In this document: in pieces, positions 1,713-59,617 of the stretch | How positions within the stretch are numbered: the first letter of the stretch is position 1 | How the letters are laid out: the number at the start of each line of letters is the position of its first letter | The notes under the pieces: model-generated | Database searches by the model: none | Told to the model about the DNA's origin: nothing | Seen by the model: the letters and a program-made list of their open reading frames with translations, nothing else | Source of the DNA: Lepidodermella squamata | Lineage: Eukaryota > Animalia > Gastrotricha | Assembly: GCA_047495785.1 (NCBI GenBank) | Contig: JBLDXI010000026.1 | Coordinates: 558,001 to 622,000 of the forward strand | Reading direction: 5' to 3' | Length of the DNA stretch: 64,000 nucleotides | Program-made: the position numbers and the translations under genes

Positions 1713-2654
1713 CCTTAACAATGGAATTTCATCGCTATACTCAATTCGTATTTTACTGAGAATTTACCCTACGAGGGTGCTTTTTTCAACATTGCGCTCA
1801 TTACACACTTATATTGTCACACATATTGTCCATTGTATCAAAAATGTGCGATTTGAGTCTTTCAAAAGCTGCTATAACAGAAAATGCTGTTAGGATCCCC
1901 TCAGAATCCCAGGCAATGTACATAGGCAAGTCTCTCCGAATTTAACCGACAAATCTCAGTTCTGCAAAATAATATGTGGTAATCATAGTGAATGCGATGA
2001 GAGTGCGGTCAATAAAGTATTTTAAGGACTGTTTATCATCCTCGTTTTTTTCATACGTCTGTGGATCAATAATCTGCCACCGCGTGCCTGCGAAAACGGA
2101 GGAATATAATTTCGTATATAAAGCTGTTTGGCGAAGGACATCGCTCACAAGTTATTTTGTTCTCGAATCTTCGACGATTAATGCCTAAACCGCTCCGTTC
2201 TGCTGAAACGGTTGGCGGTGTTGTGAAATGTCGCGTTTGCGATCTGGTTGTATCGCGTCGTCCCAAGTACCTACCTTCCTGCTGCGAAGCGTGTCAAAAA
2301 TTCTTCAGGCGGAACTGCCATAGAGCTAGTCAGCTGAGGTGCAAGCATACCAAAGGGAGGCAAAGCCCAGACCTCACCAGATATCCTGTCTATGTAACCC
2401 GTGGTATGTGCTCCAAATGTCGATTCGACAAATGTATTGCAGCTGGAATGACAAGTGAGGATAAGACATACAACTGAACTCAACATGTTTTCAAATTGAT
2501 TGTATATCCTTTCCAGGCAAGTTTCTTACCCAGGAGGCTTTTGGATCGAGGTCGGGATCAATATCTGAAACTAGTGAAGAGATCTCTGAGTCCAACATCT
2601 TAGTCCGGATTTGCAGTGTCAAAGTCCACTTTTTTTGCTGTTCAATGCGTCATG

Positions 2655-2706
2655 GTGGTGGCGGTGGTCGGAGCGGTCGGAGCGGTCGGAGCGGTCGGTG
2701 ACCGTG
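2655..2706. repeat. Subterminal 9-bp tandem repeat (GGTCGGAGC)n in the transposon left end
   Basis: ggtcggagc repeated about 3.5 times; related G-rich motifs occur on the opposite strand near the right TIR (6150-6190). Confidence 0.7.
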
Positions 2707-2901
2707 GTCATTATTAGCATGAAAAAAATTGTTTTTCTCATCTTCCGTCATTTATTGGATTTTCTAAATAAATAAAAAGAGCCTTTTTTGGGGTAATAAA
2801 TTACTATCATACAAATATGAATTAAAATCGTTGAATCAATCTGAACATTTGCAGAAGTAATTATTATTGATTCTATAGGTTTCCAGAATTTCTTTCATCA
2901 C

Positions 2902-4837
2902 ATGCCGGCGACTTACTCTGAGCCGACCATAGTTGATCAAGATGCAGCTAGGCGCAGCTTGTCTCGAATGAAGGGCCCCGTTTCATCAATTTCCAACCGA
3001 TCAGCTGTACATCGAGCTGAGGTGGTGCAGAATCTTTTCTTGCAGTCGTTACCTGTGGCGTGGCCTTTCAATGCAGCTATGGACGGGGCTGTTATTAAAA
3101 AAGCCCAATTAGTTGTAGAATACGAAAACATAGGCGTGGTTGCGTCGGAATGGCCATTGAAAAACGAGTCTAAACAGGAACAGGCTGGAGAAAAAACGCA
3201 GAGGTTAAGGTTGAATTGTCAACTGGTAATATTACAGCTTGATTATTATGTTTAGTTTGGTTCGCCTCGGCTTGAAACACGGCATTAATGCTTCCACCCT
3301 CATGACCATTAAAAATGAAATTGGCTACCAAAGTGTAACAAAAGAAAACTTCTATGGGGTTCGAAAGCGCCTTGCTATGCTTCACCCAATAACATCAACT
3401 CACCGCGGATTAGGCGCATATCGCTCGGTAGATTCAATCGTTAAAAAAATGATTGTTCGAGGCGACTTGGAAAAAGACGTTGTTAATGATCTACGGCTTC
3501 AGGTAAATCAAAATTACATATGGTCCTTGCTAGGGCAAAGTCAAATTGAACAGGTGGATGGCATGGCAGCTAGGACGAGCATGGCAGATGCAACAGTCAG
3601 TTCATACATTTGTGCTGCTAAGACAAAGGCCAAAGTGGGCTGCGCTGGTGAATATCAGCTGTCAATGTACCAGGGAAGCGAATCTTCCGAGATGTTCAGG
3701 AAGTTTTTACAGCCAACCATAGGCGAGCTCTCGAATATCGTTCGAGATGGCTTGAAGATCGGGGATGATTCTTACGATTTTCGATTATTGGTTTGCTGTG
3801 ACTACCCAGCTACTGTCAAGCTCTTTGGCTGTGGTCACCAGGGCGCCGATTTTCGTTGCGTAATCTGTGAAAGGAATATTAAAAAGCTCAATGTCCTTTC
3901 GCGGAAACGCCGATTCGACTCATACGAAAATTCATTTAAAGGAAAGCTTGGTTGGTCGAAAGATTTTGCCCCGATGATTCGTTTGGGTCCTGACAAACTT
4001 CTGATTTTACCTGATTTCTTCCACATGAAGGTCAATATTGCTCGTCAACTTATTGCTAAAGTAGGTATTCCTTCCAACAACTTGAAAGTTCAATATTCTA
4101 TTTAACAATAGATCATACGTGTTCTGAAAAGCCATGGGTTCCGCGATGCTATGAACGATCTTGTTTCTTTCTTGAAAACCAACTCGAAAAAGCCAAAATT
4201 TTCTATCGAGACCAAAGCCACAAAACGAGGTGTCATTAGTGTGCTTATCAAAAATTCCAATCACTACGGCATTTCCAAGGTATGAACCTAATTTTGTGTT
4301 ATATGAAATAAATTAGTTCCTAACTGAAATTTAAACTAGGCATTTGCTGAATTAGCCAAGAGAATGATTGGAAAGCCTCTATCCGAGTCATTTTTCCTAC
4401 CGGCTAACTTCCTCAACTCAGTCAAAACTTCAGGTCGTAACACTCGCAGGGGATCTATTCAGTCTCAAAGCAGCCGTCAGAAGCTACTGCTGTCTTCATT
4501 AAAGGATTTGCGAACCTTGTGTCTATCCACCTTGATGGTATTTCGGGACATCGAGATGAACCATGTGACGTCAACAGCTAAAATTATGGCTAGCTGCTAC
4601 GAAAAGATATGGCATCGAACTATTGGACCAGTTACTTCTTACGCTCATTTGCTCGGGTGCCATGTTTACGAGCTTCTGGAGAAAGGGGTCGATTTGGCAA
4701 AACTCTGCACTGAGAGCATTGAGTTGAGCAACAAGAAAAGACGCAGAACGATGGACTGTTCAATTTCAAACAAATACTCCAAACCGTGCCAGATTTTGAA
4801 AATCGAAAACATGAAGGAAAATTTGAAGCTGATTTGA
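2902..4837 (+). CDS. RAG1/Transib-like DDE transposase, 5 exons, about 573 aa
   Basis: Exons 2902-3203, 3256-3502, 3554-4060, 4112-4279 and 4340-4837 join in frame via GT-AG introns. Motifs LQVDGM, CCDYPATVKLFG..GADFRCVIC, PDFFHMKVNIA and VTSYAHLLGCHVYELL..LCTESIELSNKKRRR parallel RAG1 D600, D708, CxxC, DxxH, HxxxxH and E962. Confidence 0.85.
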
Positions 4838-5004
4838 AAATATTTGAAGTACCTAGAAACTGTGTTTCATTTGATAAATAAAAAGTTTGAACTATGTCAT
4901 CATGTCATCATTTTATTTCCGCATTAATCTTTGTCGACGTAGCTTTATTTCTTCCTCAACTTTGATTTATCATAGGCAGGAGGCAAAAGATCACAGCGTA
5001 ACCT

Positions 5005-6074
5005 TTACTTGTCAACCTCATAACCATCACGATCAGCATTATAGAACAAACGGAACTTGTCCTTAGCGTCCCACTGAAAACGAAACACGCCCGCTCTTAT
5101 AAGGCGGTGGATCACAGGTATTTGACGGGCAATGGCGCCAGTTGTTCTACCCAACTCTTTATCGAGGTCACGATCTGTTGGTGTCTTTGCCATCCAAAAT
5201 TCGATCATTTTAGCTGTAACACTTTCAAATTTTATCCCAGACCTGACAACATAGGCGAAACAATGCCGAATACGATTTCTTTCATCGGGACTCCACTCGG
5301 TTCTGCTCTTCGTTGATTTAGCTGTGAGATTAAACACTATTTTACACAATTTACACAGCAAAACAAAGGCTTACAATTTGAATAGCTGCTCGCCACATTT
5401 TGTATATGGTTCCATGACATTTTGAAAGCATAACTTGAATCTAGATCGACTCGGTCGCTGTCAGGGACGCTGAAGAACAACGGTCCTGGAGCAAACGAAT
5501 TGCCTGATTTACCGCTCTTCTTGCGCATATCACGTGAAACCGCTCGATTGGATTTAGTCGATTGGGTCGGCTCGATTGGTTCACGTTCATCGGGCTCATG
5601 TTGCTCATCAGCATCGTCCTCGCCATCATCCTCGCTATCGTCCTCGCCATCACCCCCGTCGTCATCCTCGTCATCGCTCTCATCTTCATCCTCGTCATTG
5701 TCCTCGTCATCTTCCGATGCATCTTCCTCGCCATCAACAACAGCATCACCCACGGCACCATCCTGGCCATCATCATGACCATCGACCTCGTGATCATCTC
5801 CGCCTTCAACTCCATTACGCTCCACCTCCATTTCTTGGCCGCTAACACCTTCCGCTTCGCCAGTTTTTCGCTGTTTGGCTACCCGCGGCAACTTCAACGC
5901 GACCTCTTCAGCAACAGGAGCGGCCTTTCTTCGTGTGCTTGTCTCGTTTTCTCGCGCACTCTTTCGCCGCGCATCGCTCTGCTTGCGATTGCGATCTTTC
6001 TCCTCAAGAATTGCCGCATCTTTTGTGGCTTGAATTGCCGCTTCCTTTGCTGCGATTTTCCGCGTTTTGGTCAT
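5005..6074 (-). CDS. Transposon second gene: basic N-terminus, long Asp/Glu tract, C-terminal Myb/SANT-like HTH (about 343 aa)
   Basis: ATG at 6074; a 38-nt intron (5337-5374) joins ORFs 5337..6122 and 5005..5361 in frame; motif TEWSPDERNRI...LGRTTGAIARQI. Confidence 0.7.
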
Positions 6075-8748
6075 GAAAAAAAGAATATTTAAATAAGTAA
6101 ATAATGTGGAAATAATGCTCACGAGAAATTATTAGATGATAAAAAAATTCCCGACCTAATCGACCACCCCACCGCCCCGACCACACATCATGAAGCAAAA
6201 AATGTGTGGACTTTGACACTGCAAATCCAGACTAAGATGAAAGTCAGATTAATTTCGCTGCCGGTTGCGCCAGAATCATTTTTCGACAATCCTACGGAAA
6301 AGCTGGTTCGAACTTCTATTCACGCTTTCACCGTTCTTCATGATCTTGAATTCGTGAGCTTGGAGCAACTAATGAAAGGTTCACTGTTTTCACTTGAAGC
6401 CTGAATTTTAGGGTCCACTGAAAGATAGGTCCGATGCCGCTGAACAGCTCATCGATTTACGGTCCCGCATTGTTCAACGAATGAGCTACAACGTTGAACA
6501 TGTGAAAGCATACCAATTTCAGTTTTTAGGCTAGAAGTAGTTTGTTTAATATTGTGCTTAAGTATTTGTTGACCACAGAGACTTGGGACGAGATCAGCAT
6601 TGAAGATGTTGAACCAGGCCGTGGGTTTGCCTCTGGAAAAATGAGCTCTGTTTACCACAACCTGTCTGGCGGTTTGAAACCATCCTGGTATGGAATGGAT
6701 GATAACGTGAAGGAGTTGATTTATCAGGAATTTCCCTACTTGGCGGTAAAACAATTCTGTGAAGTTTCCATTTTCTTTAGCAATCAATTCCAGAAACTGG
6801 AGCCAGAATATCATCTACTGAAAAAACTGCTGAGCAAGCTTGCTCCCACTTTCATCGAAGCTGCATTAGTTCTGAGCATATCAATATTTCACGGTATTAA
6901 GAAACCATGAGATTTCAGCATTTCTTAATGCCGAACTTTCCAGATGAGACTGGCAAAAATCGCCGAATCCAGCGCTTGCAAAAAACGCTTATCGATGTTC
7001 TGCGGAGAGTAATAAGCGACAGGTACGGCGATAGCCCTGATGTTTTGAATAGCCGCATGCAGCTTCTTGGCCAAAGCGTTACGACTACTGTTCGGCTGCA
7101 AAAACTCGCTCTAACTTTCTTTGAACATGAAGCCCACGACTTGGAGTTTTGCAGTTCAGCTGCTCAGGCTCTCAATATGCAGCGTGATTCGCCAATGAAC
7201 AATGATTGAAGATGTTTTGAGATGACAAAATAACACATTCTGATCCGGTTTTTCAAGTAAAATTGTTGACTGTTGGCCCTCATTGAATGACAAATTCATG
7301 CATATTTTAAGAAGTGAAACGAGAGTCCCGCAAATTCTTTTCATTTTACAGCCGAGGATAACGGCACAACTAGCAATGTATTATTGATAAGAAATCTCCC
7401 ATAGCTAGACATTTCTTTTCAATATGTTGCTTTAACCTTGATTATGACGATTTTCAAGTTGGACAAAAGCGAAGGCGACGTCCGCGCTAGGTACTTCGAA
7501 GCAGACATCTACTAGCGTGCATTTCCAGGCCTCATGTTGTTTATTTTCACCGCCTAGTCGATACTATTCTGTAAGTAATGCGCGTGCGTAGCGTAATTAC
7601 CCAGAACTGGAACTAGGGTCAGAACGTTTTTGATAGTTATATGGGTCACCTACCTGTCATTTTTACTAGCGTTCAGGGTGCCTGGATAGGTGATCAGAGT
7701 GATCCTGGAGCTGCCAGCTGCGTGGGATTCTATATTTGCCAAAATTATAAGTGCTTTCATCAGAAAATAAAGCAAAGTGAAGAAATTGTGATTTGCTTGA
7801 GATTTTAGATTCTCCACTAAATCACGGTCCGAAACCTCTGAAAATATACGGAACAGTGGGCTGAATCTTCGTTTTCTTGTATCGTCCAGCCCTCCCCTCC
7901 CCACCCCCTTCCTTGGATATACTTTCTTGGAGAATTCACTGCATTACGATTTCAGTTCAGCAGCAGGCTATAGTATCGAGTTTCACGAAATGCGTAGCAC
8001 AACCTAAATCTGTCCGCGACTTGATTTACAGCTTAGAAATTAGCTCGCCAGGGTGTTTGCTACACATGTCGTAAAAGCTAGGATAACATTTTGCGTGTCA
8101 TAGATGTAATGATGTAATGATAGATCATGGAGGCATTCGATTTTTTAAGACAACAGACAATTCATTCTGCTTTACCGTCATGCATTATTAATTCCTGCAC
8201 TCAGAAAATATAATACAGACTCATTTCTGCGTGTTTTGAGCCTAACAGGTACATCTATGGGATAATACTTCGAGTTCAGATATGTCGGGGAATACGTTTT
8301 CTAGCGTGGGGATTAGAAGACAAAACCGGACATTTCCTGTTACCCTGTTATCCGCCGGACTTTGTTTTCAAAAGGTACTAATAGCGTGGACCGCGGGCCG
8401 CCGTTTGATGAAGGAGAGGGCCGTTTTATAGGAGCCAACTCCATATTAATATCTCCTACAAATACATATTTTGTATTGGATACCTAAATTAATGGTCAGT
8501 AATTTCAGTCGACAACGCGAAAAACAACCTCGAGAAGCTACCGTGACGGCCAAGATTAGCAACCACACCGTTTTTCCCAACCCGAAACTTCTAACAACTC
8601 TAAACACCGTGGCTAAGGACTCAAGCAGTTACCGCTTCTTTTGATATTAGTTATTAGTGCGTAAGCTTTGAGAAAAAATTGAGAATGAAATACTTGAGAT
8701 CCGACGTTACCGACGAATTTTGCTGTTCATGTCATTAAACAGCTGATT

Positions 8749-10168
8749 TTATTGAGGGATATAACTGACACGTTTGTATTTTAGAACTGAGATTGGGTCG
8801 GATATTATGTTATCGGGTCCAAATTCACAAGGGATGCATTCGCTTTTTATCATGTCGCCTGCTATTGCAGGAGATTCCGCTAAATTCATCGTCTCGGTGA
8901 AAGCCTTGTACAAAGGTGACGGATCATTATTCATAGCCATTTCACTCATCGAAATTCTTTGAGCATCCAATACGGCTCGAGTGCACTCGCGAAATTTCAG
9001 CAGTCTAGCCTTAACAATAGATTTATCTCCGCTGGCAGCAAGCATCATTTCAGACTGCAATGCAGATAACATTCGCCGTTGAAATTGCATGACACGAGGA
9101 TTTGTACCAGAAATATCTATAAAGAAAACCCTATAATTCGAGATTGTGTTCCAAAGGATCCCTACCATAAAAAATCAAAACACTCAGCAGGAACGCAGCC
9201 TCCAGGAATGTCGGGCTGAAATCTTCCAGTTGTTGCTTCAGATGGTTGATTTTCGGCATCATCCTCTGCGCAACAGGTTAATCAGTATTATTGCTGTAAA
9301 AACCCAATTTTTACCGTCATTAGCCGCGGATGGATATCGCGCATTAGAGGCACGGCCTCGTCCGGCATTCCCAGCCACGACGGGTTAGCTGAGCTTGGCA
9401 AATTGTGGTAAATTGCCACCATGTGAATTATTGACGAAGCTCGCAACTCGCGGAAGTCTTCTTCTGTAAGTTCGGGCGCAAGATCTGTGAAATCAAATAA
9501 CGAAAATCTCCGTAAGTAACTCCTCGGCACTGGTTTTGCTCACCTTTAAAACAGAAGCCGTAGGTGTTCAAGAGATTTGCACAATAAGCAGTGTGGTAGA
9601 ATAGTCGTTCTTTCAACTGTATCACATCGCGTATTGGGGATGCCCTAAAAGGGCCCTTCAGTGAATTGAATTACATATGAGATTTAAAACAAATACAAGC
9701 GTATTACGAATTCAAGATCGTGGAGAACAGTGAAAGCCCGAAGCGATCGCATCGAAATTATTGAATTCGGTTCTTCAATAACCATCTCTGGAGTCTTACT
9801 CAGAATTAGAGGCGGTTCAGGCTCGTATTTTTGGAAAGCATTCACTTGATTGATGCGTGAGACCTTCGCTTCATCACATAAATATTTGCCTGTGGAAAAA
9901 TCTATTTGTTTCTAAAAGTTGAGATGATTCAAAACAAACTTTGCATTCCTGTTGCCAAACAACGATCAAAGCGGCATTTCGCACACATTTTACGCGCGAC
10001 GTAGATAGTGGCAACCGATTGGTGTGCTGATCGAGCGTTATGGCGACATTTCAGCTTATTATAACTTTGGCAGTTTCGTCGGAAAAATTTCTGGCAGGCC
10101 TCGCATGTTCGCGGTTGATACTTTTCACGCGGTACTACAAAGCAATCGCATACAGGGCATTTAGTCAT
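8749..10168 (-). CDS. Atypical nuclear-receptor-like gene copy 2
   Basis: DBD CPVC-x14-CEACQKFFRRNC; multi-exon LBD with family motifs AFTVLHDLEF, IYHNLP and an EAAFLLSVLIF helix. Confidence 0.85.
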
Positions 10169-12615: not shown

Positions 12616-13935
12616 ATGACTAAATGCCCCGTATGTGATTGCTTCGTGGTACCGCGTGAGAAATATCAACCGCGAACCTGCGATGCCTGCCAGAAATTTT
12701 TCCGGCGGAATTGCCAACGCTACAGCAAGCTAAAATGTCGCCATCATGATAGACCATCATACCAATCGGTTGCTACCATCTACGTCGCCAGAAAAATGTG
12801 TGGTAAATGCCGCTTCGACCGCTGTTTGGCAACAGGAATGCAAAGTTTGTTATGGATTATCTCAATCAAAGAAGCAATTAATTCAAACTTAAAATAGGCA
12901 AGTTTTTATGCGATGATGCGAAAATCGCTCGAAACAGACACGCAAAGGCTTCATCTTTATGCGACCCTGAACCGACACCAATTCTGAGTAAGACTCCGGA
13001 AATGGTTGTTGATGACCCGAATACGAAAATAGCGATGAGGTCACTTCGAGCTTTCACCGTTCTCCATGGTCTTGAATCCGTAAGAATCTTTCTTCCTATC
13101 TTTGAGTTAATTCCACGTATGAGTTCTTCAAAGGCCCCTATGAAGAATTCATCCGCACTTGATACGCTACAACTACGGGAGAGTCTACTCCAACAAACTG
13201 CTTATGCTACTGAACTTTTGAACACTTACGGCTTTTGCTTCCTGGGTGAGTCCCTGTATGATCGAAGTAAACATGGAAGATGTTACGATCCTTTTACTGA
13301 TCCAGATCTTGCTCCAGGCATTACAAAGCAGGACTTTTGCGATCTGCGATCTTCATCAATAATGCACATGGTAGCAGTTTATCACAATTTGCCAAGTTCA
13401 GCGAGCCCCTCATTGCTTGGAATCCCCGATCAGGTCGTGCCGTTGTTTGATCGCTTGTTTCCGCAGCTAGTGGCGGTAATGATTTTTTGAGCGCTGGAAG
13501 AATTTGTTTAATGATCGTCCACACAGAAAGCGATGCCAAAAATAAACAATTTGAAGATGCAACTGGACAAGTTCAACCCAACTTTCTTGGAAGCGTCGCT
13601 CATGCTGAGTGTTTTAATTTTTCACGGTAAGACCCTGACGTACTTAAACCGTGCAGGATGATAATATAAGGTTTTCTATAGATTTTTCGGGCAAGAATGC
13701 CCCTATCATGGAACTTCAACGGCAACTTTTTTCTGCTATGCGTACTGAAATGCTGCATGCTGCCAGAGGGGATAAATCCTCAGTCGACGCTAGGCTGCTA
13801 ATGTTTCGCCAGTGTGTCCAAGCTGTTATTGATTTTCAAAAGCGTACGCTGAGTGAACTGAAGCTAATAGCCCTGGAAGATGCGTCACCTCAATTCAAGA
13901 TGTTCACCAATATTCTTAATTTAGGTGAATCTTAG
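12616..13935 (+). CDS. Atypical nuclear-receptor-like gene copy 3 (close paralogue of copy 2, opposite orientation)
   Basis: DBD CPVC-x14-CDACQKFFRRNC; LBD exons with PTFLEASLMLSVLIFH. Confidence 0.85.
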
Positions 13936-32469: not shown

Positions 32470-32485
32470 AATCTCAATTTTATTC

Positions 32486-46952: not shown

Positions 46953-48212
46953 TCAAGGAAACTGAATTGCTTTTGCCGCGGATTCGAAAGCTGGAAATTT
47001 CTTTGACAGGCCATCGAGAGCTGCCAAAAGAAGCTTGCTAACAGCTAGCGTTTGATTGTAGCATTTTCGAAATAGCGCCGATTCCTCGCCGAATTCTTGA
47101 CGAGAAATATCTTTTGATTCGCTGAACCAATGATATGTCAAAGCCAAGATGAGTTGCCGCTGAATGCATTGAACCCTTTCAATCCCAAACGAGTTATCCA
47201 CTAGAAACAGCTGCATAAAGAATGCATAATGAAAATTCAAAAAATACCATGGAAGTATAAAATGCTTAGTAGCAGCGAAGCCTCAGTGAAAGAAGGGTTC
47301 CATTTAGCGAGGTAAACAGCTAATAGCTTACACGCTTCGAATACTTCCTAATAGAAAAAAGTTAACTAGGTTCATAACTAGTTGCCCTATTGCTGGTCAA
47401 ACCTTGAATTCAGGGAATGCCTCGAGGTACATCGGGGCAAGTTCATCCGATAATCCGAAGAAAGTGGACAAGCTACTATTAGGCAAATTATGAAACAAGG
47501 CCTTGATATGTATGATGCTTGATGTTTTCAAGACAGCGAGATCTTTCTCTGTCAAACGCATGGCTCCATTGTTTGACGTTAAATCTACTTGTAAACTTGT
47601 AGATAGCTCCTAGAAACGCGCCTCGAAATGTATTAGAGTTACCTTGAAATGAAAGGCCATATCTGGAGCAAATTGCTAGTTCTGCCATTAACTGCTCGAT
47701 GCCCAGTTCTAGGAGCCCTCCTATGCTGGTAACCGTCGTATCTGGCTTTTTCAAGGGCAGCAGTTCGAAGTCATGGAGAAGAGTGAAGCCTTTAATTGCC
47801 ATCCTCAAAGCACATTCTGCTCCACTTCTTTCCCTCGCCGACGGTTCCAGTGGCAGGGAGAATGGCTGAGAAGCTGTATTTGTGTGGCTATCAGATGCTG
47901 AAATGTTTTCTGGAGATTTCTCTAAGAATTTGCCTGTTAAAGAAGTAATAGAATGTATGAATTTGACTTACTAAACTAACTGTTTAATCCTGCTTTGACG
48001 CATTTGTCGAATCTACATCGTGGGCAAAACTGGCCTTTCAAAGAACTGTCAATGGGACAAGATTCCAAGCGAGATTCCCCATTCCTGCATGTTAATAGCC
48101 AATGTTTCTCCACGTGGCGACGAAAAAACTTCTGACAAGCTTCACAGGTCTTCGGTTGATAGTCTTTCCGCTTTGGTACCACTGAATAACAGACCTTGCA
48201 ATAGACAGTCAT
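46953..48212 (-). CDS. Atypical nuclear-receptor-like gene copy 8
   Basis: CKVC-x14-CEACQKFFRRH; GFTLLHDFELLPLK; WNPSFTEASLLLSILYFH. Confidence 0.85.
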
Positions 48213-48336: not shown

Positions 48337-49632
48337 TCAAGTCAGATTGAGCGCAGAAGATGCCGCACTAAAGACTGCCATTCTTTGAGACATAATTGAC
48401 ATAAATGAAAGTAATTCCTTACGGATCACTAGAGTCTGTTGGTAGCATTTAGAGAAGAGCTCCATCTTCTTCCTAGTTTCCTCCACATCGCCAATCGATC
48501 GAGAGGACCACAGCATTATTAGAGCTTGGTACATTTCCTTCTGTAGATTTGTAATCCGTTCGCTGATTCTAGGATCGTCAACTATCAATAGACAAAAGTT
48601 CGTTCACAGCAAGTAAAATAAGTAAAAATTAATTACTATGAAAGAATAAAATGCCCATTAACAGAGAGCTTTCCAGGTAAGAAGGGTTTAATTGTGCCAG
48701 ATATACAGATAATTGTTTGCATGCCGCAACTGTTCTCTGAAGATATTGAATCAGAATTAATGCGCTTTATAGAAAATACTTTAGTACTTGGTATTCAGGA
48801 AAAGCTTGGGCAGAAATTTGAGTCGCCTGTTCACACATTCCGAGGTTGGCTGAGGAGCTGCCATTCGGCAGATTGTGAAACAGGGCCTTCACATGAACAA
48901 CACTCGTGGATTTCAATTCTTCCAAATCTGCCTCCGTCAGGCTCAATCGAGCTCTCATATTCATACCTTCAGAAGAATTTTTCCGGCGAGGCTAATAAAA
49001 TAACAGCAAAGCAAACCTCTGATCAGCTTGCCATACCCTTCGCATATCATTGACTCCATAACGGCCTGCTGGAGACCTAAATCAAGTACGGTTCTAACGT
49101 CTTTGATTTCAACAGTAGGTCTTTTCAGCGGCAAAAACTCGAGGCCTTGGAGCGATGGATAAGCAGTCGCAGCCATGTTCAACGCATTTTCAGCTCGAAG
49201 GCATAGTTTAGTTTGCGGATTCGAGATGATTGACATGGGTGATAGGTTGCTACCCTCCGAGGCAGATGACACCTGGTCACTAGTGGATTCTGCAAAACTC
49301 GTATTCCTCAGACCTTTAGCCATGAATTTGCCTTGATTACAAAATTCATAAAAATGTAATGAATTATTCGAATTAGTAGCCTTACTTTGCATTCCTGCCG
49401 CCAAGCATTTGTCGAAACGGCATTTAGCGCAGAATTGGCCTTTTAAACGGCTGTTCAGAATACATGGCTGGTTTAGAATTCCGGTTTTCGCCTTCATGCA
49501 GATCAGCTTTTCGTGCTTCTCGCAGTGCCGTCGGAAAAATTTCTGGCAGGCTTCGCACACCGATGGTTGATAATCTTTGCGGCGAGGAACGACCGACTTG
49601 CAAACTTTGCAAAGGACAGCATTAGGAGTCAT
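48337..49632 (-). CDS. Atypical nuclear-receptor-like gene copy 9
   Basis: CKVC-x14-CEACQKFFRRHC; ALFHNLPNG; LNPSYLESSLLMGILFFH. Confidence 0.85.
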
Positions 49633-50037: not shown

Positions 50038-51317
50038 TCATTCGAGTACAGCAGCGGCTGAGCTGAAAGCCGCGACATTAACCGAAAGCTGGTACATCGA
50101 AGCCAAAAGTTGCTTGCTAACTAGCAATGTTTGCTTGTAACACTGAGAAAAGAAATCCATCCTTCGTTTAATTATGGAATTATCAGAGCTGCTATGTCTA
50201 GCCGACCAGACCATTCTCAGCGCCCTTAAGAGCTGATTCTGAAGAAATGCAGTTGAGTTTTGCCGTTTTGACGTTTTGCCATCCTCTGATGATTAAATAA
50301 CAAAATTCTGAAATTTCGCGCAATTGTATGAAGCTTACTGTGAAAGAAAAGTATGCCAATCAGCAGAGCTGCTTCATCAAAGGAAGGATTCCATTGAGCC
50401 AAGGTTGCTGACAAAATTTGGCAAGACAGGAAAGCTTCCTTTAAGAGTAGTAGGCATCAAAGCATAATGAATTATGAACCTATCGATAATACCTCGAAAT
50501 CGGGGAATGCACCAAGATACATTGCTACCAACTCGTTTGACAAGCCGAAAAAGGTCGATGGACAGGTATTTGGTAGATTGTGATATAAAGCTTTTATATG
50601 GATAACGCTCGACGTTTTCAGCTCATCTAAATCTTCGTTGGGTATGTTTAAGCCGTTGGCGGCAGCCAGATCTGGAATTTACTCTCAAGCTGAACCTTAA
50701 GGGCTAAAAAATCATAAAATCAACTCACGGCAGAAAATTTGCCCATACTGAGCACACATCATTGTTTCAGTCATGAGTTGCTCAATTCCGAGTTTCAGCA
50801 GTAGGTCTATGTCACCAACGGCGGATTTTGGCCTCTTTAAAGGGCCTGCCTCCAAGCCATGGAGAAAGGTGAATGCCTTGACAGACATCATCAGGGCTGA
50901 CTCGGAATTGGTTAAGGCAGTAAAGGATGGCTTTGTTAGTTTGCAAATATTTGATGTAGCCGAAAAGTCATCACTAGAAGATTCGGCATGGAGTTTACTC
51001 CTCGGACGTTTAGCCATGAATTTACCTTAATTCCAATTGCTTTTAAGGAGTTAATCGTTTAAAGTAATTGACCTACTATGCATTCCTGCAGATAAGCATT
51101 TGTCGAAGCGGCATCTCGGGCAGAGTTGCCCTTTCATTTGACTGTTGAGAGTGCATTGTTGCTTTCCTGTAGTAGCCCTTAAGCAGGACAGCTTTTCGTG
51201 CCTCTCACAGTGTCGCCGAAAAAACTTCTGACAAGCTTCGCAGGTCGATGGTTGGTAATCCCTCCGTCGTGGAACAACCGACTTGCAAATTTTGCAGTTC
51301 ACAACAGTGGAAGTCAT
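50038..51317 (-). CDS. Atypical nuclear-receptor-like gene copy 10
   Basis: CKIC-x14-CEACQKFFRRHC; AFTFLHGLEAGPLK; WNPSFDEAALLIGILFFH. Confidence 0.85.
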
Positions 51318-51678: not shown

Positions 51679-52971
51679 TCATTCCAGTACGGCAGCGGCG
51701 GAGCTGAAAGCGGGGACATTTGTCGAAAGCTGGTACATTGCCGTCAAAAGTTGCTTGCTTACTAATAATGTTTGGCTGTAGCACAGAGAAAGCAAATCCA
51801 TTCTTCTTTGAATTTCGAATGAATCAGAGCCACTACCATCAGCGGACCAAAGCAATCTGAGCGTCTTTAAAAGCTGCTTCTGAAGGAAAGCTGTCGAACC
51901 TCCTCGTTTTGACATTCTGCTATCCACTGATTAAAATTCAAGAATTCGAGAATTTCACTCATATCCTGTAAATCTTACTGTGAAAGAAAAGTATGCCAAT
52001 TATCAGAGCAGCCTCGTTGAAAGAAGGATTCCATTGAGCCAAGGTTGCTGACAACTTTTGGCATGACTCGAAAGCTTCCTATTAATATTATAAATCATAC
52101 AAATTCTACTGATAACTAAGTTTCGCCATGTTTTACCATGAACTCGGGAAATGCCCCTAGGTACATTGATACCAACTCATTTGACAAGCCGAAAAAAGTC
52201 GATGGACAGGTATTAGGTAGATTGTGGTACAAAGCTTTTATGTGGACTACACTCGAAGTTTTCAAATTATCCAGGTCATCTTTTGATATTTTCAAGCCGT
52301 TGCTAGCAGCCAGCTCTGGAATTCACCATTAACATGAATCCTTTTTAAGACTCAACTGAAACCACTTACCGCTGAATAGTTGACCATATTCAGCACACAG
52401 CATTGTTTCAGTCATGAGTTGCTCGATTCCGAGTTTCAGCAGGTGATCTATGTCTCCGATTGCTGCTTTCGGCCTCTTTAATGGACCTGCCTCCAAACCG
52501 TGAAGAAAAGTGAATGCCTTGACAGACATCATCAAAGCTGACTCGGCATTTTGTAGATCAAAGGAAGTTGGCTTAATCGGGACTACAGAGTTTGCAATTT
52601 CCTTCTCATCTTTAGGTTCTGGAGAATCATAGTTTTTAGCCTCTTTGATTACTGTCATCGATTTGCCTGGATAAAATAAAAAGAATTCGAGTTTAAACGA
52701 AGATTTCAATGTCCTTACATCGCATTCCAATGGCGAGGCATTTGTCGAATCGGCAACGTGGGCATGAATTCCGTTTGCCGGCAACAGCTATGATGCACGG
52801 TGATACGGCCTTTACACCGTACTTCATTGTATTGAGGCAAATCAACGGCTTCTTACTAACGTGGTGACGGCGGAAGAATTTCTGGCACGCCTCGCAAACC
52901 GACGGCTGATAGTCGCGTCGACGAGGCACAGGCGAAGAGCAAACCTTGCAGAGGCTTGATTTGCGCTCCAT
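51679..52971 (-). CDS. Atypical nuclear-receptor-like gene copy 11
   Basis: CKVC-x14-CEACQKFFRRHH; LBD very similar to copy 10, but DBD and hinge are not. Confidence 0.85.
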
Positions 52972-53344: not shown

Positions 53345-54599
53345 TCAGGCTAAATTTAGAACGTTTGACAGCGAACTGAACGCATTCATTTGCCGTGATA
53401 ACTCAGCTACAACAGACAAGAATTCTTTTCGGATTCGTAAAGTGAGGTCATAGCATTTTGAAAATAATTTGATCTTTTGGCATGTCTCCTTTGCATCGCC
53501 AGTTAATCTAGAGGACCATAACATGAGCAACGCCTGGTACATTTGCTTTTGTAATCGGATTATCCGATCGCCCATCTTTGGATCATCAACTAGATACAAA
53601 CGTGTCAGTATTCAAAAAGCAGTGAAAAATCGCAAAAGTACCGTGAAAAAATACAATTCCTAAAATGAGCGAGCTCTCAATGAAAGACGGATTTAATTCA
53701 GCTAAACAATCTGCCAAACGGCTGCACGCAAGGAAGGTTGGCTGTAAAAATAATGAATCTTAAGCAATATGGGAAAAGTCGTCAAAATTGCTCACTTTGA
53801 ATCCAGGAAATGCCTGAATAGCAATGCTTGCAAATTGATTAGAAACGCCAAGGGTAGAAGGCGGACTGCCATTCGGCAGACTATTGAAAAGAGCCAACAC
53901 ATGGATAACACTCGTCGACTTGAGTGCATCCAGGTCGGCTTGCGTAAGACACAATGAATCGATTCCTATACATTTTCTACAAAAGCTGGTTATGATAACT
54001 ATAGTTAATCAAACCTTTGAAAAAATTCCCATATTCTTCACAGATCATCGACTCAATTGCGGTTTGTTCTAGGCCCATCCTCAAAACCGTTCCTATATCA
54101 CTGATCTCCGAGGCTGGTCGTTTCAGAGGTACCAACTCCAGTCCGTGGAAAGCAGTAAACGCATTCATCGCGTTCAAAATCATTGCTTCAGCTTTCGATC
54201 CTTTGTTAGTTTGCGGGTTATAGATAATTTTTGCAGGTGGTCGAATTAGTAGGGAATCGTACTGACGCACTGTGCCGACATTTTCCAACATGAATTTACC
54301 TCAACGACATAAGGAAAATCAATGTTATGTCGAGTTTCAGAGAATATCAGCTTACTTCGCAATCCTGCAGCTACACATTTGTCGTAACGGCATCGCGAGC
54401 ACATTTGACCTTTTAAATGACTGGCCAACTTGCATGGCTGATGGGTCACATCCTTGCCTTTATCCTGTACACAGACCAGCGCGTGAGGTTTTATGCAATG
54501 GCGTCTGAAGAATTTTTGACATGCCTCGCAAACTGTTGGCTGGTAGTCTTTGCGTCTAGGAACGAAAGACGTACAAATTTTACACAGGACAGGAGGCAT
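53345..54599 (-). CDS. Atypical nuclear-receptor-like gene copy 12
   Basis: CKIC-x14-CEACQKFFRRHC; ALFNSLPNG; LNPSFIESSLILGIVFFH. Confidence 0.85.
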
Positions 54600-54931: not shown

Positions 54932-56214
54932 TCATTTTAAATTTAGAATTGTTGACAGCGAGTTGAAAGAATGCATTTGCTGAGATAATTCAACTACAAG
55001 AGACAAAAAGGTTTTTCTGATTCGTATAGTAAGGTCATAGCACTGCGAAAACAATGCTATCTTTTGGCTTGTCTCTTTTGCATCGTTATAGGCCCATAGC
55101 ATGAGAAGCGATTGGTACATTTGCCTCTGCAATCGGACGATCCTTTCAGCCTTCTTCGCGTCATCAACTGAAAGAAACAAACATGAACTATCCGAGAATT
55201 GAAGCTTGTAGAAGTTACCTTGAAAATATATCATTCCCATAATGAGTGAACTCTCAATAAAAGACGGGTTTAACCGAGCGAGGTAATCAGCCAATCGGCT
55301 ACATTGGGCATACAGTGGCTGGAAGTAAGATGCCATGTTGCCATGGTTAAAAAAACGAAAACGGCTTACTTCGAAACCCGGGAAAGATTGAAGAGAAATT
55401 TCCTTTAATGAGTTAGATAAGCCTAGCATCGATGGAGGGCTCCCATTAGGTAGGCTGTTGAAGAGAGCTTTCACATGAACTACACTCGTCGATTTGACTG
55501 CATCCAAGTCGTCTTGAGTAACACACATTGGTTCAATTTCTACACAATCTATTAATTGCGGATAATTTACTCATTAACAGGCCCTACCTTGAAAATAATT
55601 GCCATATTTTTCACAAATTAGCGACTCCATCGCGGTTTGTTCCAGTCCCAACCTAAGTATTGTTTCAATGTCACAGATCTCCGCGTTTGGTCTTTTCAGC
55701 GGCATCGATTCAAGGCCGTGAAATAAAGGGAAGGCCTTTGCTGTGCACAACATCATAGATTCAGCTTTTGAACATTGATTCGTCTGTGGATTGGAGATTA
55801 TCGCAGGAGGTGATGGTGCACAGTCGCTCGAGGAATCAGATAACGAAATTGGGGAGCTTGAACGTCGTCCGGCACATGTCCTCGCCATAAATTTACCTTG
55901 AAAAAGAGAATTATGACAGCATTTTTTCAGGGATGACGGGATCTAGGATTACTTTGCAATCCTACAGCTACGCATTTGTCGTAACGGCAAAGCGGGCACA
56001 GTTGGCCCTTTAAATGGCTGGCCAACTTGCATGGTGAACGGTTCTGGTCATCGCCTTTCTTGCCTTTATCCTGTACACAGACCAGTGCTTCAGGTTTTCC
56101 GCAATGGCGCCTGAAGAATTTTTGACACGCCTCGCATACTGTAGGTTGATAGTCTTTGCGCCGAGGAACGACAGACGTGCAAATTTTACACAGAACAGCC
56201 GCGATAGGAGGCAT
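54932..56214 (-). CDS. Atypical nuclear-receptor-like gene copy 13
   Basis: CKIC-x14-CEACQKFFRRHC; LNPSFIESSLIMGMIYFQ. Confidence 0.85.
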
Positions 56215-58347
56215 TTTTATTCGAGGAAAAAGTTATATTAATAATGAGAGGCTATAGGGTGCGACACCGAAATTAAAAATCGATGAATCAATGAATGGCA
56301 ACAGTGCACTACCAAGTCTGAGCACGATAATTCTTTCGGTTAATGGGTCCTAAAAAAAATACGAGCAATTTACAATCTATATGTCACGAGTCGTGGGTAC
56401 TTTTTTGATACGAATTTTAGAAAACAAGGTAATCAAGGTTAAAAATATTGGTAAATAATCATGTTTTGTGTTTGCTGGTCCTGCAAGCAGTGTGCGAAGT
56501 AGGATCCGGGAACTGAGGTGTTTTCTCGGTTTATTCGGCACCCAGCCCTCAATTTTTGTTGAGAAAAGAAAATACTAAATTTGGATCATCGACTATCTAG
56601 CTAGCTGAAAGTAAATTAAGGGGAAATCTTACGGCATTACCAAATTGCATTCAATTAAATAGCTAACCATTTTATTCGGTTATTTAACTGCGGTTATGGG
56701 TAGGTCACGATTAGGGTGAGAGGCTGTGACTAGAAAAGGGGGATTTGGAACTGATTGGAAAAATTTGGAACAGAATCCAATGATGATTGGAACTGAATTC
56801 AATAGTTTCGTAATGAATTGATAATTCACTATATCCATGAATTATTTGAACTGTCCGAATGAGGACAATTTGCGAGCGTGCAGAATTTTGCAAATTTTAT
56901 AGAACCGCTAGAATTATTGCGAACCTCGTCCCAACTTTTCCAAATTTAACCCAATCAGTAAATTAGGAGTTTCTTTAACTCGTTTTCTTCAAAAGACCAC
57001 GCATGTAGAAGACATGAAGTAAGGAAGGGGTAGCCAACAATAACCTGAAATATAGCGGATTCACGGAAGAACGCCAGCGTTTATAGCAATGAGATACGAG
57101 ATACCTACTTGTGAGAGAATATCGTTAGCTTCGTTGAACAACTCGTATTTACAGTTGTTTACATCAGTTTAACGGTATAAAGGTCACGTGATAAATCATC
57201 TGTTTTTGCTTCGTCATTTACGTGTAAAAAACAACGCTTTTTACTTGTCATCTTCCACCGTGAAACTACCGTAAAAAGTATAAAACCGAGTTCAACAACG
57301 CTAACGATATGGGAGGAATACACTGCTTTACGGAAAATGAAGCTAAGCGAGAAGCTAAGGGCGAAGTAGAAGAGGAAATCGGCGACAAATAATGTTCTGA
57401 TCTCAAGGACAAACCTCATTAGGCCCAGATGCTTTTCCGGAAAATTATAGCTAGTCTGAGTAAGGGTTCGAGCGAAGCTTATTACAAAATAGTTATTGAC
57501 GATGGAAATGTATGTAGCCTTGAAGTATTACAGATAGCCTCTGTATTTCATTGATACTTTTGATGGAGTATAGGAATCCGAAAAATGAATGGGAATGAAA
57601 ATGGAATAGACAGACAGTTAGCAAAATATCAAGACACGCGTTCTATCACGCGTGAGACAGGCGAGACCGCTCTTGAAAACAGAAAACAGGTCAATCGCCT
57701 ATAAACTAGATAATATCAGACTCGATTTGCTCAGGGCACTATAGAGGGGACTGGCATGAATTACTGCACAATAATGGAAAACAAAGGGACAGGTGAGTAT
57801 TTTGATTCAAATTATACACAAGAAAAAAGTCGTTCATTTACCGAAAGAATGAGTTAAGATAAATGTTTAAAATCGGATACTTCGGAATTCACAAGCGAAA
57901 ATTCCACGCCCATTGGGGTGATTTTTGTTCTGTTGAAGAATAAATTGTTGAGCTCATCAATATTGCAGATTTGTGAAAGCTTATTATGTGGGCAGGGAGG
58001 AATTATGGGGCGCATTAGAAGAAGTCGGCTTAAGGCAAGATCTCATTGACAAAATAAAATGCTCCGTATAGAGACAGCATTGCTAAAGTGTGCATAAATT
58101 TCAGCGCATAACCTTTGCTTTCGAAACCGCACTGTGATGTCCCTTGAAATAGATAGCACTCAGTTAATTATTGATATTTTTGCAGCACGATATGGCTGAA
58201 AATTAATGTCCCGAAAATCAAGTTTGTAATTGTTAATGAAAATAACTGCAATCTAGCTTGTGCAATTTTAGGAACTTTTATTTCAGAGCAGCCTTCCAGT
58301 ATGCATGTTTATGTTTTGTTGTCATATCGCAGTTCATGAGCATGAAT

Positions 58348-59617
58348 TCACTTAAAATTCAAAACTTTTGACAGCGAGTTGAAAGAATTGAACTGCTGAG
58401 ATAATTCAGCTACAACAGACATAAATTCTTTTCGAATCAATATAGTGAGTTCATAGCATTTCGAAAACAATGCCATCTTCTGACAGGTCTCCCTTGTATC
58501 GCCAGAGGACCACAACATGAGAAGCGCTTGGTAAATTTGCCGCTGCAATCGGACAATCCTTCCAGCCACCCTCGCGTCGTCAACTAAAAGAAGCAATCGT
58601 GAACCTTTAAAGAGTTAGACCTAGAAAAATTACCGTGGAAGAATATGGTTCCTAAAATGAGTGAACTCTCAATGAAAGACGGGTTCAATTGAGCGAGACA
58701 ATCAGCCAACTGGCTGCATGCGGCAAACGTTGACTGGAGAGTAAAAACTACATTGCCATAACTAAGAAAACTAAAACCGCTTACCTTGAACCCCGGGAAA
58801 GATTTAAGGGCCACTTCCATAAATGAGTTAGACACGCCTAGTGTCGAGGGAGGGCTTCCGTTAGGTAGGCAGTTGAATAGAGCTTTCACTTGGACAACGC
58901 TTGTCGATTTGAGCGCATCTAAGTCATTCCAAGTAAGGTACATTGGTTCCATTTCTGCAAAACCCGTTTATTGCGAAGAATATTCCCATTATCAGGCCAT
59001 ACCTTTGAAAAATTTGCCATATTTTTCACAAATTTTCGACTCCATTGCTGTTTGTTCAAGGCCTAATCCAAGTACCTTTTCGATGTCATTGATCTCCGCG
59101 TTGGGTCTTTTCAGCGGCACCGATTCAAGGCCGTGGAATAGAGTGAAGGCCTTCGCTGCGCACAGCATCATAGATTCAGCTTTCGAACATTGATTGGTTT
59201 GTGGGTTCGTGATTATCGTACGAGGGGATCGCGCACTGCCAGGGGAATCAGACAACGACGCTGGGGAGCTTGAACATTGTTCGACATGTGCCTTCGCCAT
59301 GAATTTACCTTGATACAGATAAGAATAGCATAATTTTTAGGAATCGCGGGATATAGGCTTACTTTGCAATCCAGCAGCTACGCATCTGTCGTAACGGCAA
59401 AGCGGGCACAGTTGGCCCTTTAAATGGCTGGCCAACTTGCATGGTGAACGGTTCTGGTCATCGCCTTTCTTGCCTTTATCCTGTACACAGACCAGTGCTT
59501 CAGGTTTTCCGCAATGGCGCCTGAAGAATTTTTGACACGCCTCGCATACTGTAGGTTGATAGTCTTTGCGCCGAGGAACGACAGACGTGCAAACAGAACA
59601 GAAGCGATGGGAGGCAT
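58348..59617 (-). pseudogene. Atypical nuclear-receptor-like gene copy 14, 7-bp frameshifting deletion at the first DBD cysteine
   Basis: Relative to copy 13, TTTTACA is missing after position 59593 (plus strand), giving MPPIASVLFARLSF...; downstream exons appear intact. Confidence 0.8.

What the first reader, a model, noticed from the sequence alone, without database searches (positions are those of the whole stretch)
2181..59617. Fourteen-copy expansion of a nuclear-receptor family with a non-canonical DNA-binding domain
Seen in sequence: the intact copies all have C-x2-C-x14-C-x2-C with a V(P)RRxxYQP-type loop and P-box CEAC(Q/R/C)KFFRR (CDAC in copy 3). All share an intron right after GMxS and about 1.3-kb genes with a very diverged LBD, still recognisable by a helix 8/9-like PSFxExxLLxxILFFH...RIxxLQ. 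Established knowledge: canonical NRs have a 13-residue loop with H-Y/F-G and P-boxes such as CEGCKG or CEACKA, and large divergent expansions are known chiefly from nematodes. Inference: loss of the base-contacting P-box Lys (Q-K instead of K-G/A) implies a new response element, and this looks like an independent lineage-specific radiation, possibly of chemical or xenobiotic sensors.
Basis: partly seen in the sequence, partly recalled or inferred. Interest (0 to 1): 0.8.

Follow-up and report, generated by a model that had tools for sequence, protein, structure and literature searches.

The report
Tandem array of divergent nuclear receptors
Fourteen neighbouring genes encode an apparently undescribed, fast-diverging branch of the nuclear-receptor family of animal transcription factors with an altered DNA-reading motif; the family is real and unusual in detail, but lineage-specific receptor expansions of this kind are already known.

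Summary
The window carries 14 genes of about 1.3 kb. [quoted passage not shown] Each also has a phase-1 intron in the Ser codon after GMx. All ten DBDs tested pass Pfam zf-C4.

The C-terminal half misses Pfam Hormone_recep but is a true ligand-binding domain (LBD). Profile-profile comparison with 52 canonical LBDs gives 94-96% probability, against 3.4% or less for controls. An AlphaFold model of an intronless environmental relative matches only receptor LBDs in the PDB.

Twelve copies look intact and are under purifying selection (dN/dS 0.17-0.31). One is split by a 3.6-kb DNA transposon. One has lost its in-frame start through a 7-nt deletion.

Relatives with the same P-box and loop, also in tandem arrays, were found only on unnamed metagenome contigs. 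The window's 14 copies form their own clade (100/100). No paper in the library contains this P-box.

Placement among subfamilies NR0-NR8, the host species, the DNA target and any ligand remain unknown. This is a new variant of a known kind, and the sensor idea is untested.

The parts
2181..7209 (+). Copy c01. DBD exon 2181-2454. Exon 2 starts at 2517 and is interrupted by a transposon. The rest of the gene lies at about 6240-6353, 6412-6521, 6598-6745, 6794-6893 and 6944-7209. The reading frame stays open on both sides of the insertion. Finger II lacks the sixth Cys.
   Evidence: Spliced alignment and models; in-frame flanks; zf-C4 33.4 bits; finger spacing.
2596..6239 (.). DNA transposon inserted in exon 2 (hinge region) of c01. 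Its 41-nt terminal inverted repeats lie at 2596-2636 and 6199-6239. Internal ORFs run on both strands.
   Evidence: Inverted repeat I1, 90% complementary; ORF 3239-4102 gives a weak Transposase_21 hit, E 0.005 and below the Pfam cut-off.
8749..10168 (-). Copy c02. Six exons, intact ORF, P-box CEACQK, no sixth Cys. It has a long C-terminal tail.
   Evidence: zf-C4 37.5 bits.
12616..13935 (+). Copy c03. Six exons, intact ORF, P-box CDACQK, no sixth Cys.
   Evidence: zf-C4 33.8 bits.
23334..24775 (+). Copy c04. Intact ORF and probably seven exons; the exon 2 sub-structure is uncertain. No sixth Cys.
   Evidence: zf-C4 46.9 bits.
42351..43623 (-). Copy c05. Six exons, P-box CEACCK. It has the most canonical finger II (C-x6-C-x9-C-x2-C).
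   Evidence: zf-C4 50.8 bits; best PDB match ROR-gamma DBD at 45 bits.
43865..45152 (-). Copy c06. Five exons, P-box CEACRK. It keeps the extra exon-2 intron and has lost the last intron.
   Evidence: zf-C4 42.2 bits.
45515..46875 (-). Copy c07. Five exons, intact. The likely start is the ATG at 46818.
   Evidence: zf-C4 43.3 bits.
46953..48212 (-). Copy c08. Five exons, intact.
   Evidence: zf-C4 44.3 bits.
48337..49632 (-). Copy c09. Five exons, intact. Intron 1 is in frame without a stop, which gives the 224-aa stop-to-stop reading frame 48964-49635.
   Evidence: zf-C4 36.9 bits.
50038..51317 (-). Copy c10. Five exons, 354 aa, introns of 51, 57, 54 and 53 nt. This was the hand-built template model.
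   Evidence: zf-C4 43.3 bits.
51679..52971 (-). Copy c11. Five exons, intact. Sister of c10.
53345..54599 (-). Copy c12. Five exons, intact. Intron 1 spans 54355-54300.
54932..56214 (-). Copy c13. Five exons, intact. Introns 3 and 4 are in frame, giving the 212-aa ORF 54935-55570 that was used for structure prediction.
   Evidence: zf-C4 34.9 bits.
58348..59617 (-). Copy c14. All exons are open, but a 7-nt deletion relative to c13 just after the ATG (59617) shifts the frame, so the DBD frame has no ATG. Probable young pseudogene.
   Evidence: c13/c14 dN/dS 0.31, dS 0.42.

Best explanation
The feature is a tandem, lineage-specific expansion of a divergent nuclear-receptor subfamily in a compact animal genome. 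Introns are about 50 nt and spacers between adjacent genes of the main block are about 80-400 bp.

What the genes encode (shown):
- Each gene encodes a protein of about 340-390 aa with almost no A/B domain, only 3-19 residues before the first Cys.
- Next comes a two-zinc-module zf-C4 DBD, then a short acidic or Ser-rich hinge, then a complete but very diverged helical-sandwich LBD.
- The LBD ends in a helix at the H12 position.

How they most likely act (inferred): as sequence-specific transcription factors.
- The recognition helix keeps Glu and the FFRR basic pair. It puts Gln where nearly all receptors have the base-contacting Lys, and Lys at the next, discriminating position. The preferred half-site is therefore probably not a plain AGGTCA or AGAACA.
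- The D-box is enlarged and variable (6-15 residues instead of 5), and four copies lack the sixth Cys. This argues against canonical DBD dimer geometry.

How the array arose (shown): by repeated local duplication. Physical neighbours are sister genes, and duplication was followed by divergence under purifying selection. Two copies were recently disabled, one by transposon insertion and one by a frameshift at the start.

Whether the LBD binds small molecules is not known.
For: DBD identity:
- Pfam zf-C4 33-51 bits for 10 of 10 tested.
- The family profile hits 87 PDB receptor DBDs and nothing else.

LBD identity:
- hhalign of the family LBD alignment against 52 canonical LBDs gives Prob 95.7%, E 9.8e-9, over 140 columns covering H3-H9.
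- The window's 14 sequences alone give 94.0%, E 1.4e-7. The reversed control gives 3.4% and shuffled controls 0.1% or less.
- The window LBD HMM hits the environmental full-length relatives at 112-133 bits.
- AlphaFold2 of relative P0024 residues 161-435 gives pLDDT 71.6 and pTM 0.69. Its Foldseek top 50 are all NR LBDs, including PPAR, Nurr1/Nur77 (TM up to 0.67), ROR and RAR.
- The window's own partial c13 ORF gives NR LBDs in 48 of the top 50 hits.

Gene integrity: open frames and GT-AG introns in all 14 copies, and dN/dS 0.17-0.31 in five close pairs.

Tandem origin and monophyly: the tree separates the window copies with 100/100 support, and neighbours c10/c11 and c12/c13/c14 are sisters.

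Intron pattern fits the tree: the extra exon-2 intron is shared by c01-c06 and by the metagenome relatives at the same site, and is absent from the c07-c14 clade.
Against: - No expression or splicing data exist. The gene models rest on paralogue-guided spliced alignment only.
The good model is therefore of a relative that is 20-26% identical in the LBD.
- The window-derived model lacks H1-H3, carries two intron-encoded inserts, and gives only weak Foldseek E-values (0.045 and above).
- The LBD misses Pfam Hormone_recep, and its HMM finds no receptor LBD among PDB sequences.
- Copies c01-c04 have only seven of the eight zinc-ligand cysteines, so their second module may fold differently.
- DNA specificity, dimerisation and ligand binding are all untested.
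Confidence: 0.85

Rival explanations
1. The genes are ordinary members of an already named subfamily whose DBD has simply drifted. Candidates are nematode HNF4-derived supplementary receptors, NR1J/HR96-like xenobiotic receptors, NR5A/NR1F-type monomer binders, or single-DBD derivatives of the two-DBD receptors, whose first DBD carries CEACKK.
For: - The P-box differs from the 2DBD first-DBD motif EACKK and the ERR motif EACKA (PMC10497141) by one or two residues.
- The best PDB DBD matches are NR5A2/SF-1/Rev-erb for the family profile and ROR-gamma/NR5A2 for c05.
- Some environmental receptors outside the family also have a 14-residue loop.
Against: - DBD scores across all PDB subfamilies lie within about 13 bits (32-45), so no subfamily stands out.
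- HNF4 is among the lower matches at about 32 bits.
- Both DBDs of 2DBD receptors score alike at 25-38 bits, far below true family members at 67-82 bits, and there is a clear gap to the best non-member at 55.6 bits.
- Each gene has a single DBD.
- The canonical LBD HMM, iterated three times, never recruits the family.
Confidence: 0.12
2. The receptors are real, but the LBD is a ligand-independent regulatory or dimerisation module, as in NR4A. On this reading the array is not a set of chemical sensors.
For: - The best TM-scores of the LBD model are to the pocket-less NR4A receptors Nurr1, Nur77 and DHR38 (TM 0.65-0.67).
- The region between H5 and H7 is short, with only a minimal beta-turn.
- Most copies lack the conserved Glu of the AF-2 core in their last helix.
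Against: - The model is of medium confidence, and no coordinates were available to measure a cavity.
- PPAR, ROR and RAR LBDs match almost as well as NR4A.
- Rapid divergence of tandem paralogues under purifying selection is also the pattern seen in sensor families.
Confidence: 0.4
3. The array is mostly a graveyard of non-functional duplicates.
For: Two of the 14 copies are visibly damaged, and there is no expression evidence.
Against: - Twelve copies have complete ORFs of about 350 codons, with all splice sites GT-AG.
- dN/dS is 0.17-0.31 at dS 0.4-1.2.
- The zinc ligands and the KFFRR motif are invariant across copies that share only 23-77% identity.
Confidence: 0.04

Closest known systems
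Nematode supplementary nuclear receptors (supnrs; HNF4-derived expansion, hundreds of nhr genes; PMC10938818, PMC3908500)
   Same: Both are lineage-specific expansions of orphan receptors. Both have atypical P-boxes and fast-diverging LBDs. Clustered genes and short introns, which I recall as typical of nematode nhr genes (not checked here), would also match.
   Different: No affinity to HNF4 was detected; its DBD is among the weaker PDB matches. This family has a 14-residue first-finger loop, an EACQK P-box, an enlarged D-box and no A/B domain. Its LBD falls below the Pfam Hormone_recep threshold. The host taxon is unknown.
'Divergent NRs' with atypical P-boxes in flatworms and molluscs (for example 17 in Macrostomum lignano; PMC8363021)
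   Same: Both are receptors that fit no named group, carry atypical P-boxes, and duplicated independently in single lineages.
   Different: None of the P-boxes quoted in that paper's main text matches this one. The string CEACQK is absent from the searchable literature. No UniRef or NCBI protein clustered with the family.
First DBD of two-DBD receptors (NR7 / 2DBD-NRA, P-box CEACKK) and ERR (CEACKA) (PMC10497141)
   Same: Both share the C-E-A-C start of the P-box, followed by FF and a basic pair.
   Different: These genes have one DBD each. Gln replaces the Lys at P-box position 5. The profile scores to 2DBD DBDs are ordinary, at 25-38 bits.
NR4A (Nurr1/Nur77/DHR38) and PPAR/ROR ligand-binding domains
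   Same: They are the best structural matches of the predicted LBD, with TM 0.55-0.67 over about 250 columns.
   Different: Sequence identity is only 10-16%. This similarity carries no phylogenetic signal and there is no evidence about a pocket.
CHC2 second zinc finger of parasitic-flatworm HR96b (PMC8363021)
   Same: It is a precedent for a receptor DBD whose second module is not C4.
   Different: In c01-c04 it is the sixth Cys that is missing, with a conserved C-(K/R)-H after Cys5. In HR96b the seventh ligand is replaced by His.

Membership tests
Nuclear receptor superfamily | zf-C4 DNA-binding domain above the Pfam gathering score | tested here: met
   PF00105 scores 33.4-50.8 bits against a cut-off of 21.1 for 10 of 10 DBD exons. 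The family profile hits 87 PDB receptor DBDs.
Nuclear receptor superfamily | Canonical zinc-module spacing: C-X2-C-X13-C-X2-C and C-X5-C-X9-C-X2-C (PMC10497141) | tested here: not met
   All 14 copies have X14 in finger I. Finger II is C-x6..15-C-x9/10-C-x2-C in c05-c14, and c01-c04 lack the sixth Cys.
Nuclear receptor superfamily | Ligand-binding domain recognised by Pfam Hormone_recep (PF00104) | tested here: not met
   No PF00104 hit at E up to 10 for eight C-terminal pieces, including the 212-aa c13 ORF. The precomputed Pfam annotation of relative P0024 lists PF00105 only.
Nuclear receptor superfamily | C-terminal domain homologous to, and folding as, the receptor helical-sandwich LBD | tested here: met
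   hhalign gives 95.7% (family) and 94.0% (window only), with controls at 3.4% or less. AF2 plus Foldseek gives NR LBDs for all of the top 50 hits for relative P0024. For the window's own partial ORF, 48 of the top 50 are NR LBDs.
Nuclear receptor superfamily | Ligand pocket and AF-2 charge clamp | not testable with these tools
   No model coordinates were returned. A C-terminal helix sits at the H12 position, but most copies lack the AF-2 Glu.
Nematode supnrs (HNF4-derived) | Closest canonical relative is HNF4 (NR2A) | tested here: inconclusive
   The HNF4 DBD scores 31.7-32.7 bits, against 42-45 for NR5A2 and ROR-gamma. All subfamilies lie within about 13 bits. No labelled reference set was available for a tree.
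Nematode supnrs (HNF4-derived) | Host is a nematode | not testable with these tools
   The source organism could not be identified.
2DBD-NR (NR7) | Two DBDs in tandem before one LBD | tested here: not met
   There is one DBD per gene and no extra DBD fragments.
2DBD-NR (NR7) first DBD / ERR | P-box EACKK / EACKA | tested here: not met
   The P-boxes are EACQK (11 copies), DACQK, EACCK and EACRK.
NR0 (receptors lacking a DBD or an LBD) | Only one of the two domains is present | tested here: not met
   Both domains are present in all 14 gene models.

The most novel reading that the evidence does not exclude
This is a previously unnamed nuclear-receptor subfamily, outside NR0-NR8, confined to an under-sampled group of small, compact-genome animals. 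Replacement of the near-universal base-contacting P-box Lys by Gln, together with a longer first-finger loop and an expanded D-box, gives it a new class of response element and probably monomeric or novel dimeric binding. On this reading it has radiated independently in each species as a set of environmental or metabolic sensors.
Probability: 0.3. Interest if true: 0.7.

Novelty: new variant of a known kind. Interest (0 to 1): 0.55.

Why it matters
Nuclear receptors are the main route by which animals turn small lipophilic molecules directly into transcription. Their DNA code is built on a nearly invariant recognition helix.

A whole clade that keeps the fold but swaps the key Lys for Gln, lengthens the first finger, varies the D-box threefold, and in some members drops a zinc ligand is a natural experiment. 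It shows how far that code can move.

The family also shows that large receptor radiations are not only a nematode phenomenon. It marks an animal lineage that is almost absent from annotated databases.

Practically, the family is invisible to Pfam's LBD model. Automated annotation would therefore call these genes DBD-only proteins.

Tried and rejected
1. Multi-exon protein alignments built from separate exon references (A1, A3, A4). MAFFT stacked non-overlapping fragments on top of each other, so these alignments were discarded. Only alignments of long contiguous rows (A2, A5, A6) were used.

2. The search for homologous proteins with the c09 DBD-plus-exon-2 ORF gave no hit. The word index misses this family.

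3. Identifying the organism:
- An exact look-up of an intronless window ORF was not on record.
- An Rfam scan of the window found nothing.
- The ADAM fragment found only a 35% trout homologue.
- Cluster look-ups of neighbours on the metagenome contigs and of the next-best DBD hits returned no names.
- A literature search for the sample name returned nothing relevant.

4. The JGI metagenome scan with the DBD alignment returned four loci at 32% identity, none of them family members.

5. The LBD HMM searched against PDB sequences gave only spurious hits.

6. The idea that the DBD derives from the first DBD of 2DBD receptors was rejected. Both DBDs of those proteins score alike and low.

7. The paralogous secreted proteins at 15955 and 17802 have no Pfam or PDB relative.

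8. Searches for 'CEACQK' and 'X14-C-X2-C' in the paper library gave zero papers.

Full report
**The observation**

A six-frame scan for C-x2-C-x12..16-C-x2-C finds 14 receptor-like matches. The only other matches are four artefacts in a poly-Cys reading of a CAG/CAA repeat.

- Three genes lie on the + strand (DBD starts 2229, 12625, 23352).
- One lies on the - strand at 10159.
- Ten form a head-to-tail block on the - strand from 43.6 to 59.6 kb.

All 14 have a 14-residue first-finger loop, mostly xVVPRRxDYQPxx. All have the P-box C(E/D)AC(Q/C/R)KFFRR.

The ten DBD exons I submitted all pass Pfam zf-C4, at 33-51 bits against a cut-off of 21.1. A profile of the 14 DBDs hits 87 receptor DBDs in the PDB and nothing else.

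The printed alignments to LRH-1 and ROR-gamma show three things:
- The loop has one extra residue compared with the canonical C-X2-C-X13-C-X2-C (definition in PMC10497141).
- Gln (Cys in c05, Arg in c06) occupies the position of the canonical P-box Lys.
- Lys occupies the Gly/Ala position that follows it.

**Gene models**

I built one model by eye for the copy at 51317-50038. It has 5 exons, 354 aa, and introns of 51, 57, 54 and 53 nt.

I then wrote a protein-to-genome spliced aligner, which reproduced that model exactly. I applied it to all loci using the best paralogue as template.

- All 14 copies give uninterrupted reading frames of 339-387 codons with GT-AG introns of 42-76 nt. The one exception is the transposon-filled gap in c01.
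- Intron 1 always splits the Ser codon after GMx.
- Copies c01-c06 have an additional phase-0 intron after the LHxLEF motif.
- c06 has lost the last intron.
- Spacers between adjacent genes of the main block (c05-c13) are only about 80-400 bp, and the proteins start 3-19 residues before the first Cys. There is therefore no A/B domain to speak of.
- An HMM of the whole family finds no further fragments in the window.

**Damaged copies**

c14 has a 7-nt deletion relative to its sister c13 immediately after the ATG at 59617. This leaves the DBD frame without a start codon.

Exon 2 of c01 is interrupted at 2596-6239 by an element with 41-nt terminal inverted repeats that are 90% complementary.
- The element contains ORFs on both strands, one with a weak, sub-threshold Transposase_21 match.
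- The two halves of the exon remain in the same frame, so the insertion looks recent.

The other twelve copies look intact.

**Divergence and selection**

Pairwise protein identity is 23-77%. For the five closest pairs dN/dS is 0.17-0.31 at dS 0.4-1.2, which indicates purifying selection.

**The second zinc finger**

The second zinc module is unusual.
- c05 has a near-canonical C-x6-C-x9-C-x2-C.
- c06-c14 have D-boxes of 9-15 residues and x10 spacing.
- c01-c04 lack the sixth Cys altogether (C-x20..22-C-x2-C) and share a C-(K/R)-H after Cys5.

A non-C4 second finger has a precedent in flatworm HR96b (PMC8363021).

**Is the C-terminal half an LBD?**

Sequence-to-profile methods fail to detect it. 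Pfam Hormone_recep does not detect it, and an HMM of the domain finds no receptor among PDB sequences. Three other lines of evidence say that it is an LBD.

1. Profile-profile comparison.
   - I collected 52 canonical LBDs from the proteins returned by the big search, using three rounds of HMM iteration. The family was never recruited.
   - I compared their alignment with the family LBD alignment using hhalign. The result was probability 95.7%, E 9.8e-9, over 140 columns spanning H3 to H9.
   - The family's LT..DL..LK.SS segment aligns to the canonical L...DQ..LLK.S segment. WNPSFxEAALL aligns to the H7-H8 motif.
   - With the window's 14 spliced proteins alone the result is 94.0%, E 1.4e-7.
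   - A reversed alignment gives 3.4%, and five column shuffles give 0.1% or less.

2. Fold of a relative.
   - The window LBD HMM matches the environmental full-length relatives at 112-133 bits.
   - One of them is P0024, an intronless 435-aa ORF. Its residues 161-435 fold with AlphaFold2 at pLDDT 71.6 and pTM 0.69 into an all-helical domain with a minimal beta-turn.
   - All 50 top Foldseek PDB matches for that model are receptor LBDs, with TM up to 0.67. They include PPAR, Nurr1/Nur77/NOR1, ROR, RAR and DHR38.

3. The window's own sequence.
   - The longest contiguous window-encoded piece is the c13 ORF 54935-55570. It covers exons 3-5 and includes two in-frame introns.
   - It folds at pLDDT 69.7 and retrieves receptor LBDs in 48 of its top 50 hits. 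The E-values are weak (0.045 and above) and the TM-scores are partial.

Mapping the family onto the P0024 model shows that the window proteins end in the helix that follows H10/11, which is the H12 position.

**Relatives elsewhere**

An exhaustive HMMER search of 1.84 billion cluster representatives with the DBD profile gave 1983 hits at E up to 1e-3.

- True family members share the x14 loop and CEACQK(F/Y)F(R/Q)R. They score 67-82 bits, except P0093 (52.6 bits, extra insertion in the loop), which is assigned by its full-length match to P0024. The best non-member scores 55.6 bits.
- All of them are unnamed proteins from ENA metagenome assemblies.
- Their contigs (GC 35-39%) carry them in tandem as well, with three genes on L009 and two on L001/L007.
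- Most of these genes have a single 54-61-nt intron, 153 nt in one case. It lies exactly where c01-c06 have their extra intron.
- A maximum-likelihood tree separates the 14 window genes from seven metagenome genes with 100/100 support. It also makes physical neighbours sisters: c10/c11, c12/(c13,c14), and c01/(c02,c03).
- The clade c07-c14 is the one that lacks the extra intron, so the intron pattern agrees with the tree.

**Comparison with known families**

Subfamily placement is not resolved. PDB DBDs of all subfamilies score within about 13 bits of each other. NR5A2, SF-1, Rev-erb and ROR-gamma are on top, and HNF4 is low.

The P-box resembles EACKK of the first DBD of two-DBD receptors and EACKA of ERR (PMC10497141). 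However, each gene has one DBD, and both DBDs of 2DBD proteins score only 25-38 bits.

Lineage-specific expansions of divergent receptors with atypical P-boxes are documented in nematodes (PMC10938818) and in flatworms and molluscs (PMC8363021). Other database receptors also lack the P-box Lys, for example CRACAAFFRR. The phenomenon is therefore known.

The particular combination seen here is not. 'CEACQK' and 'X14-C-X2-C' occur in no paper of the library.

**What remains inference**

Nothing here shows that the Gln/Lys recognition helix reads a new half-site, that the enlarged D-box changes dimerisation, or that the LBDs sense chemicals.

The best TM-scores are to pocket-less NR4A LBDs. That is at most a hint towards ligand independence.

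The source organism could not be identified.

**Verdict**

This is a new variant of a known kind and is of moderate interest.

Noticed in passing
window 2596-6239: A 3.6-kb DNA transposon with 41-nt terminal inverted repeats sits inside exon 2 of c01. It carries a tnp2-like ORF (3239-4102, weak Pfam hit) and, on the other strand, a highly acidic ORF built on a 12-nt periodic repeat (5340-6122).
   Followed up: partly
window 2181-24775 (copies c01-c04): These four copies lack the sixth zinc-ligand Cys of the DBD and share a C-(K/R)-H motif after Cys5. Their second zinc module may use a different ligand set or may not bind zinc.
   Followed up: partly
window 55953-56214 vs 59363-59603: Exon 1 (the DBD) of c13 and c14 is 90% identical in nucleotides, against 77-81% for their other exons, 67-75% for the introns and 54% for 300 nt upstream. 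This could reflect gene conversion or simply stronger constraint on the DBD.
   Followed up: partly
window 15955-16995 and 17802-18767 (+): Two adjacent intronless paralogues encode secreted-looking proteins of about 320-346 aa with repeated Cys-containing modules. They have no Pfam or PDB relative, and the first of them (the only one looked up) has no exact match on record.
   Followed up: partly
window 10808-11749 (-) and 20176-21171 (-): Two ORFs encode repetitive Gly/Arg/Phe-rich units (GGRRGGFGEMRPFGG-like) that alternate with acidic DDDSSDSDEE spacers. They may be secreted, disordered or processed precursor proteins.
   Followed up: no
window 39477-40976 (+): A 499-aa ORF that is extremely rich in Gln. 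Its CAG/CAA repeat creates the spurious poly-Cys 'zinc finger' matches on the opposite strand.
   Followed up: no
window 25086-25544, 31783-32469, 41295-42107, 60325-63033: The neighbouring genes are a Cu/Zn superoxide dismutase fragment, two PAN/apple-domain proteins, and an ADAM-type metalloprotease with a disintegrin domain and a Thr-rich tail. The closest named homologue of the ADAM piece is only 35% identical (trout), which suggests a poorly sampled lineage.
   Followed up: partly
proteins P0081, P0091, P0103, P0107, P0113, P0118, P0120 (no loci fetched): A second unnamed family of receptor DBDs. The one cluster checked (P0081) is ENA-only. It also has a 14-residue first-finger loop, a P-box CEACK(R/K)F(F/Y), and a long insert with a conserved Trp-Arg in finger II. 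Only short ORFs were seen.
   Followed up: no
window 56215-58347: A 2.1-kb spacer lies between c13 and c14. This is far longer than the 80-400-bp spacers elsewhere in the array, and it contains no recognisable gene.
   Followed up: no
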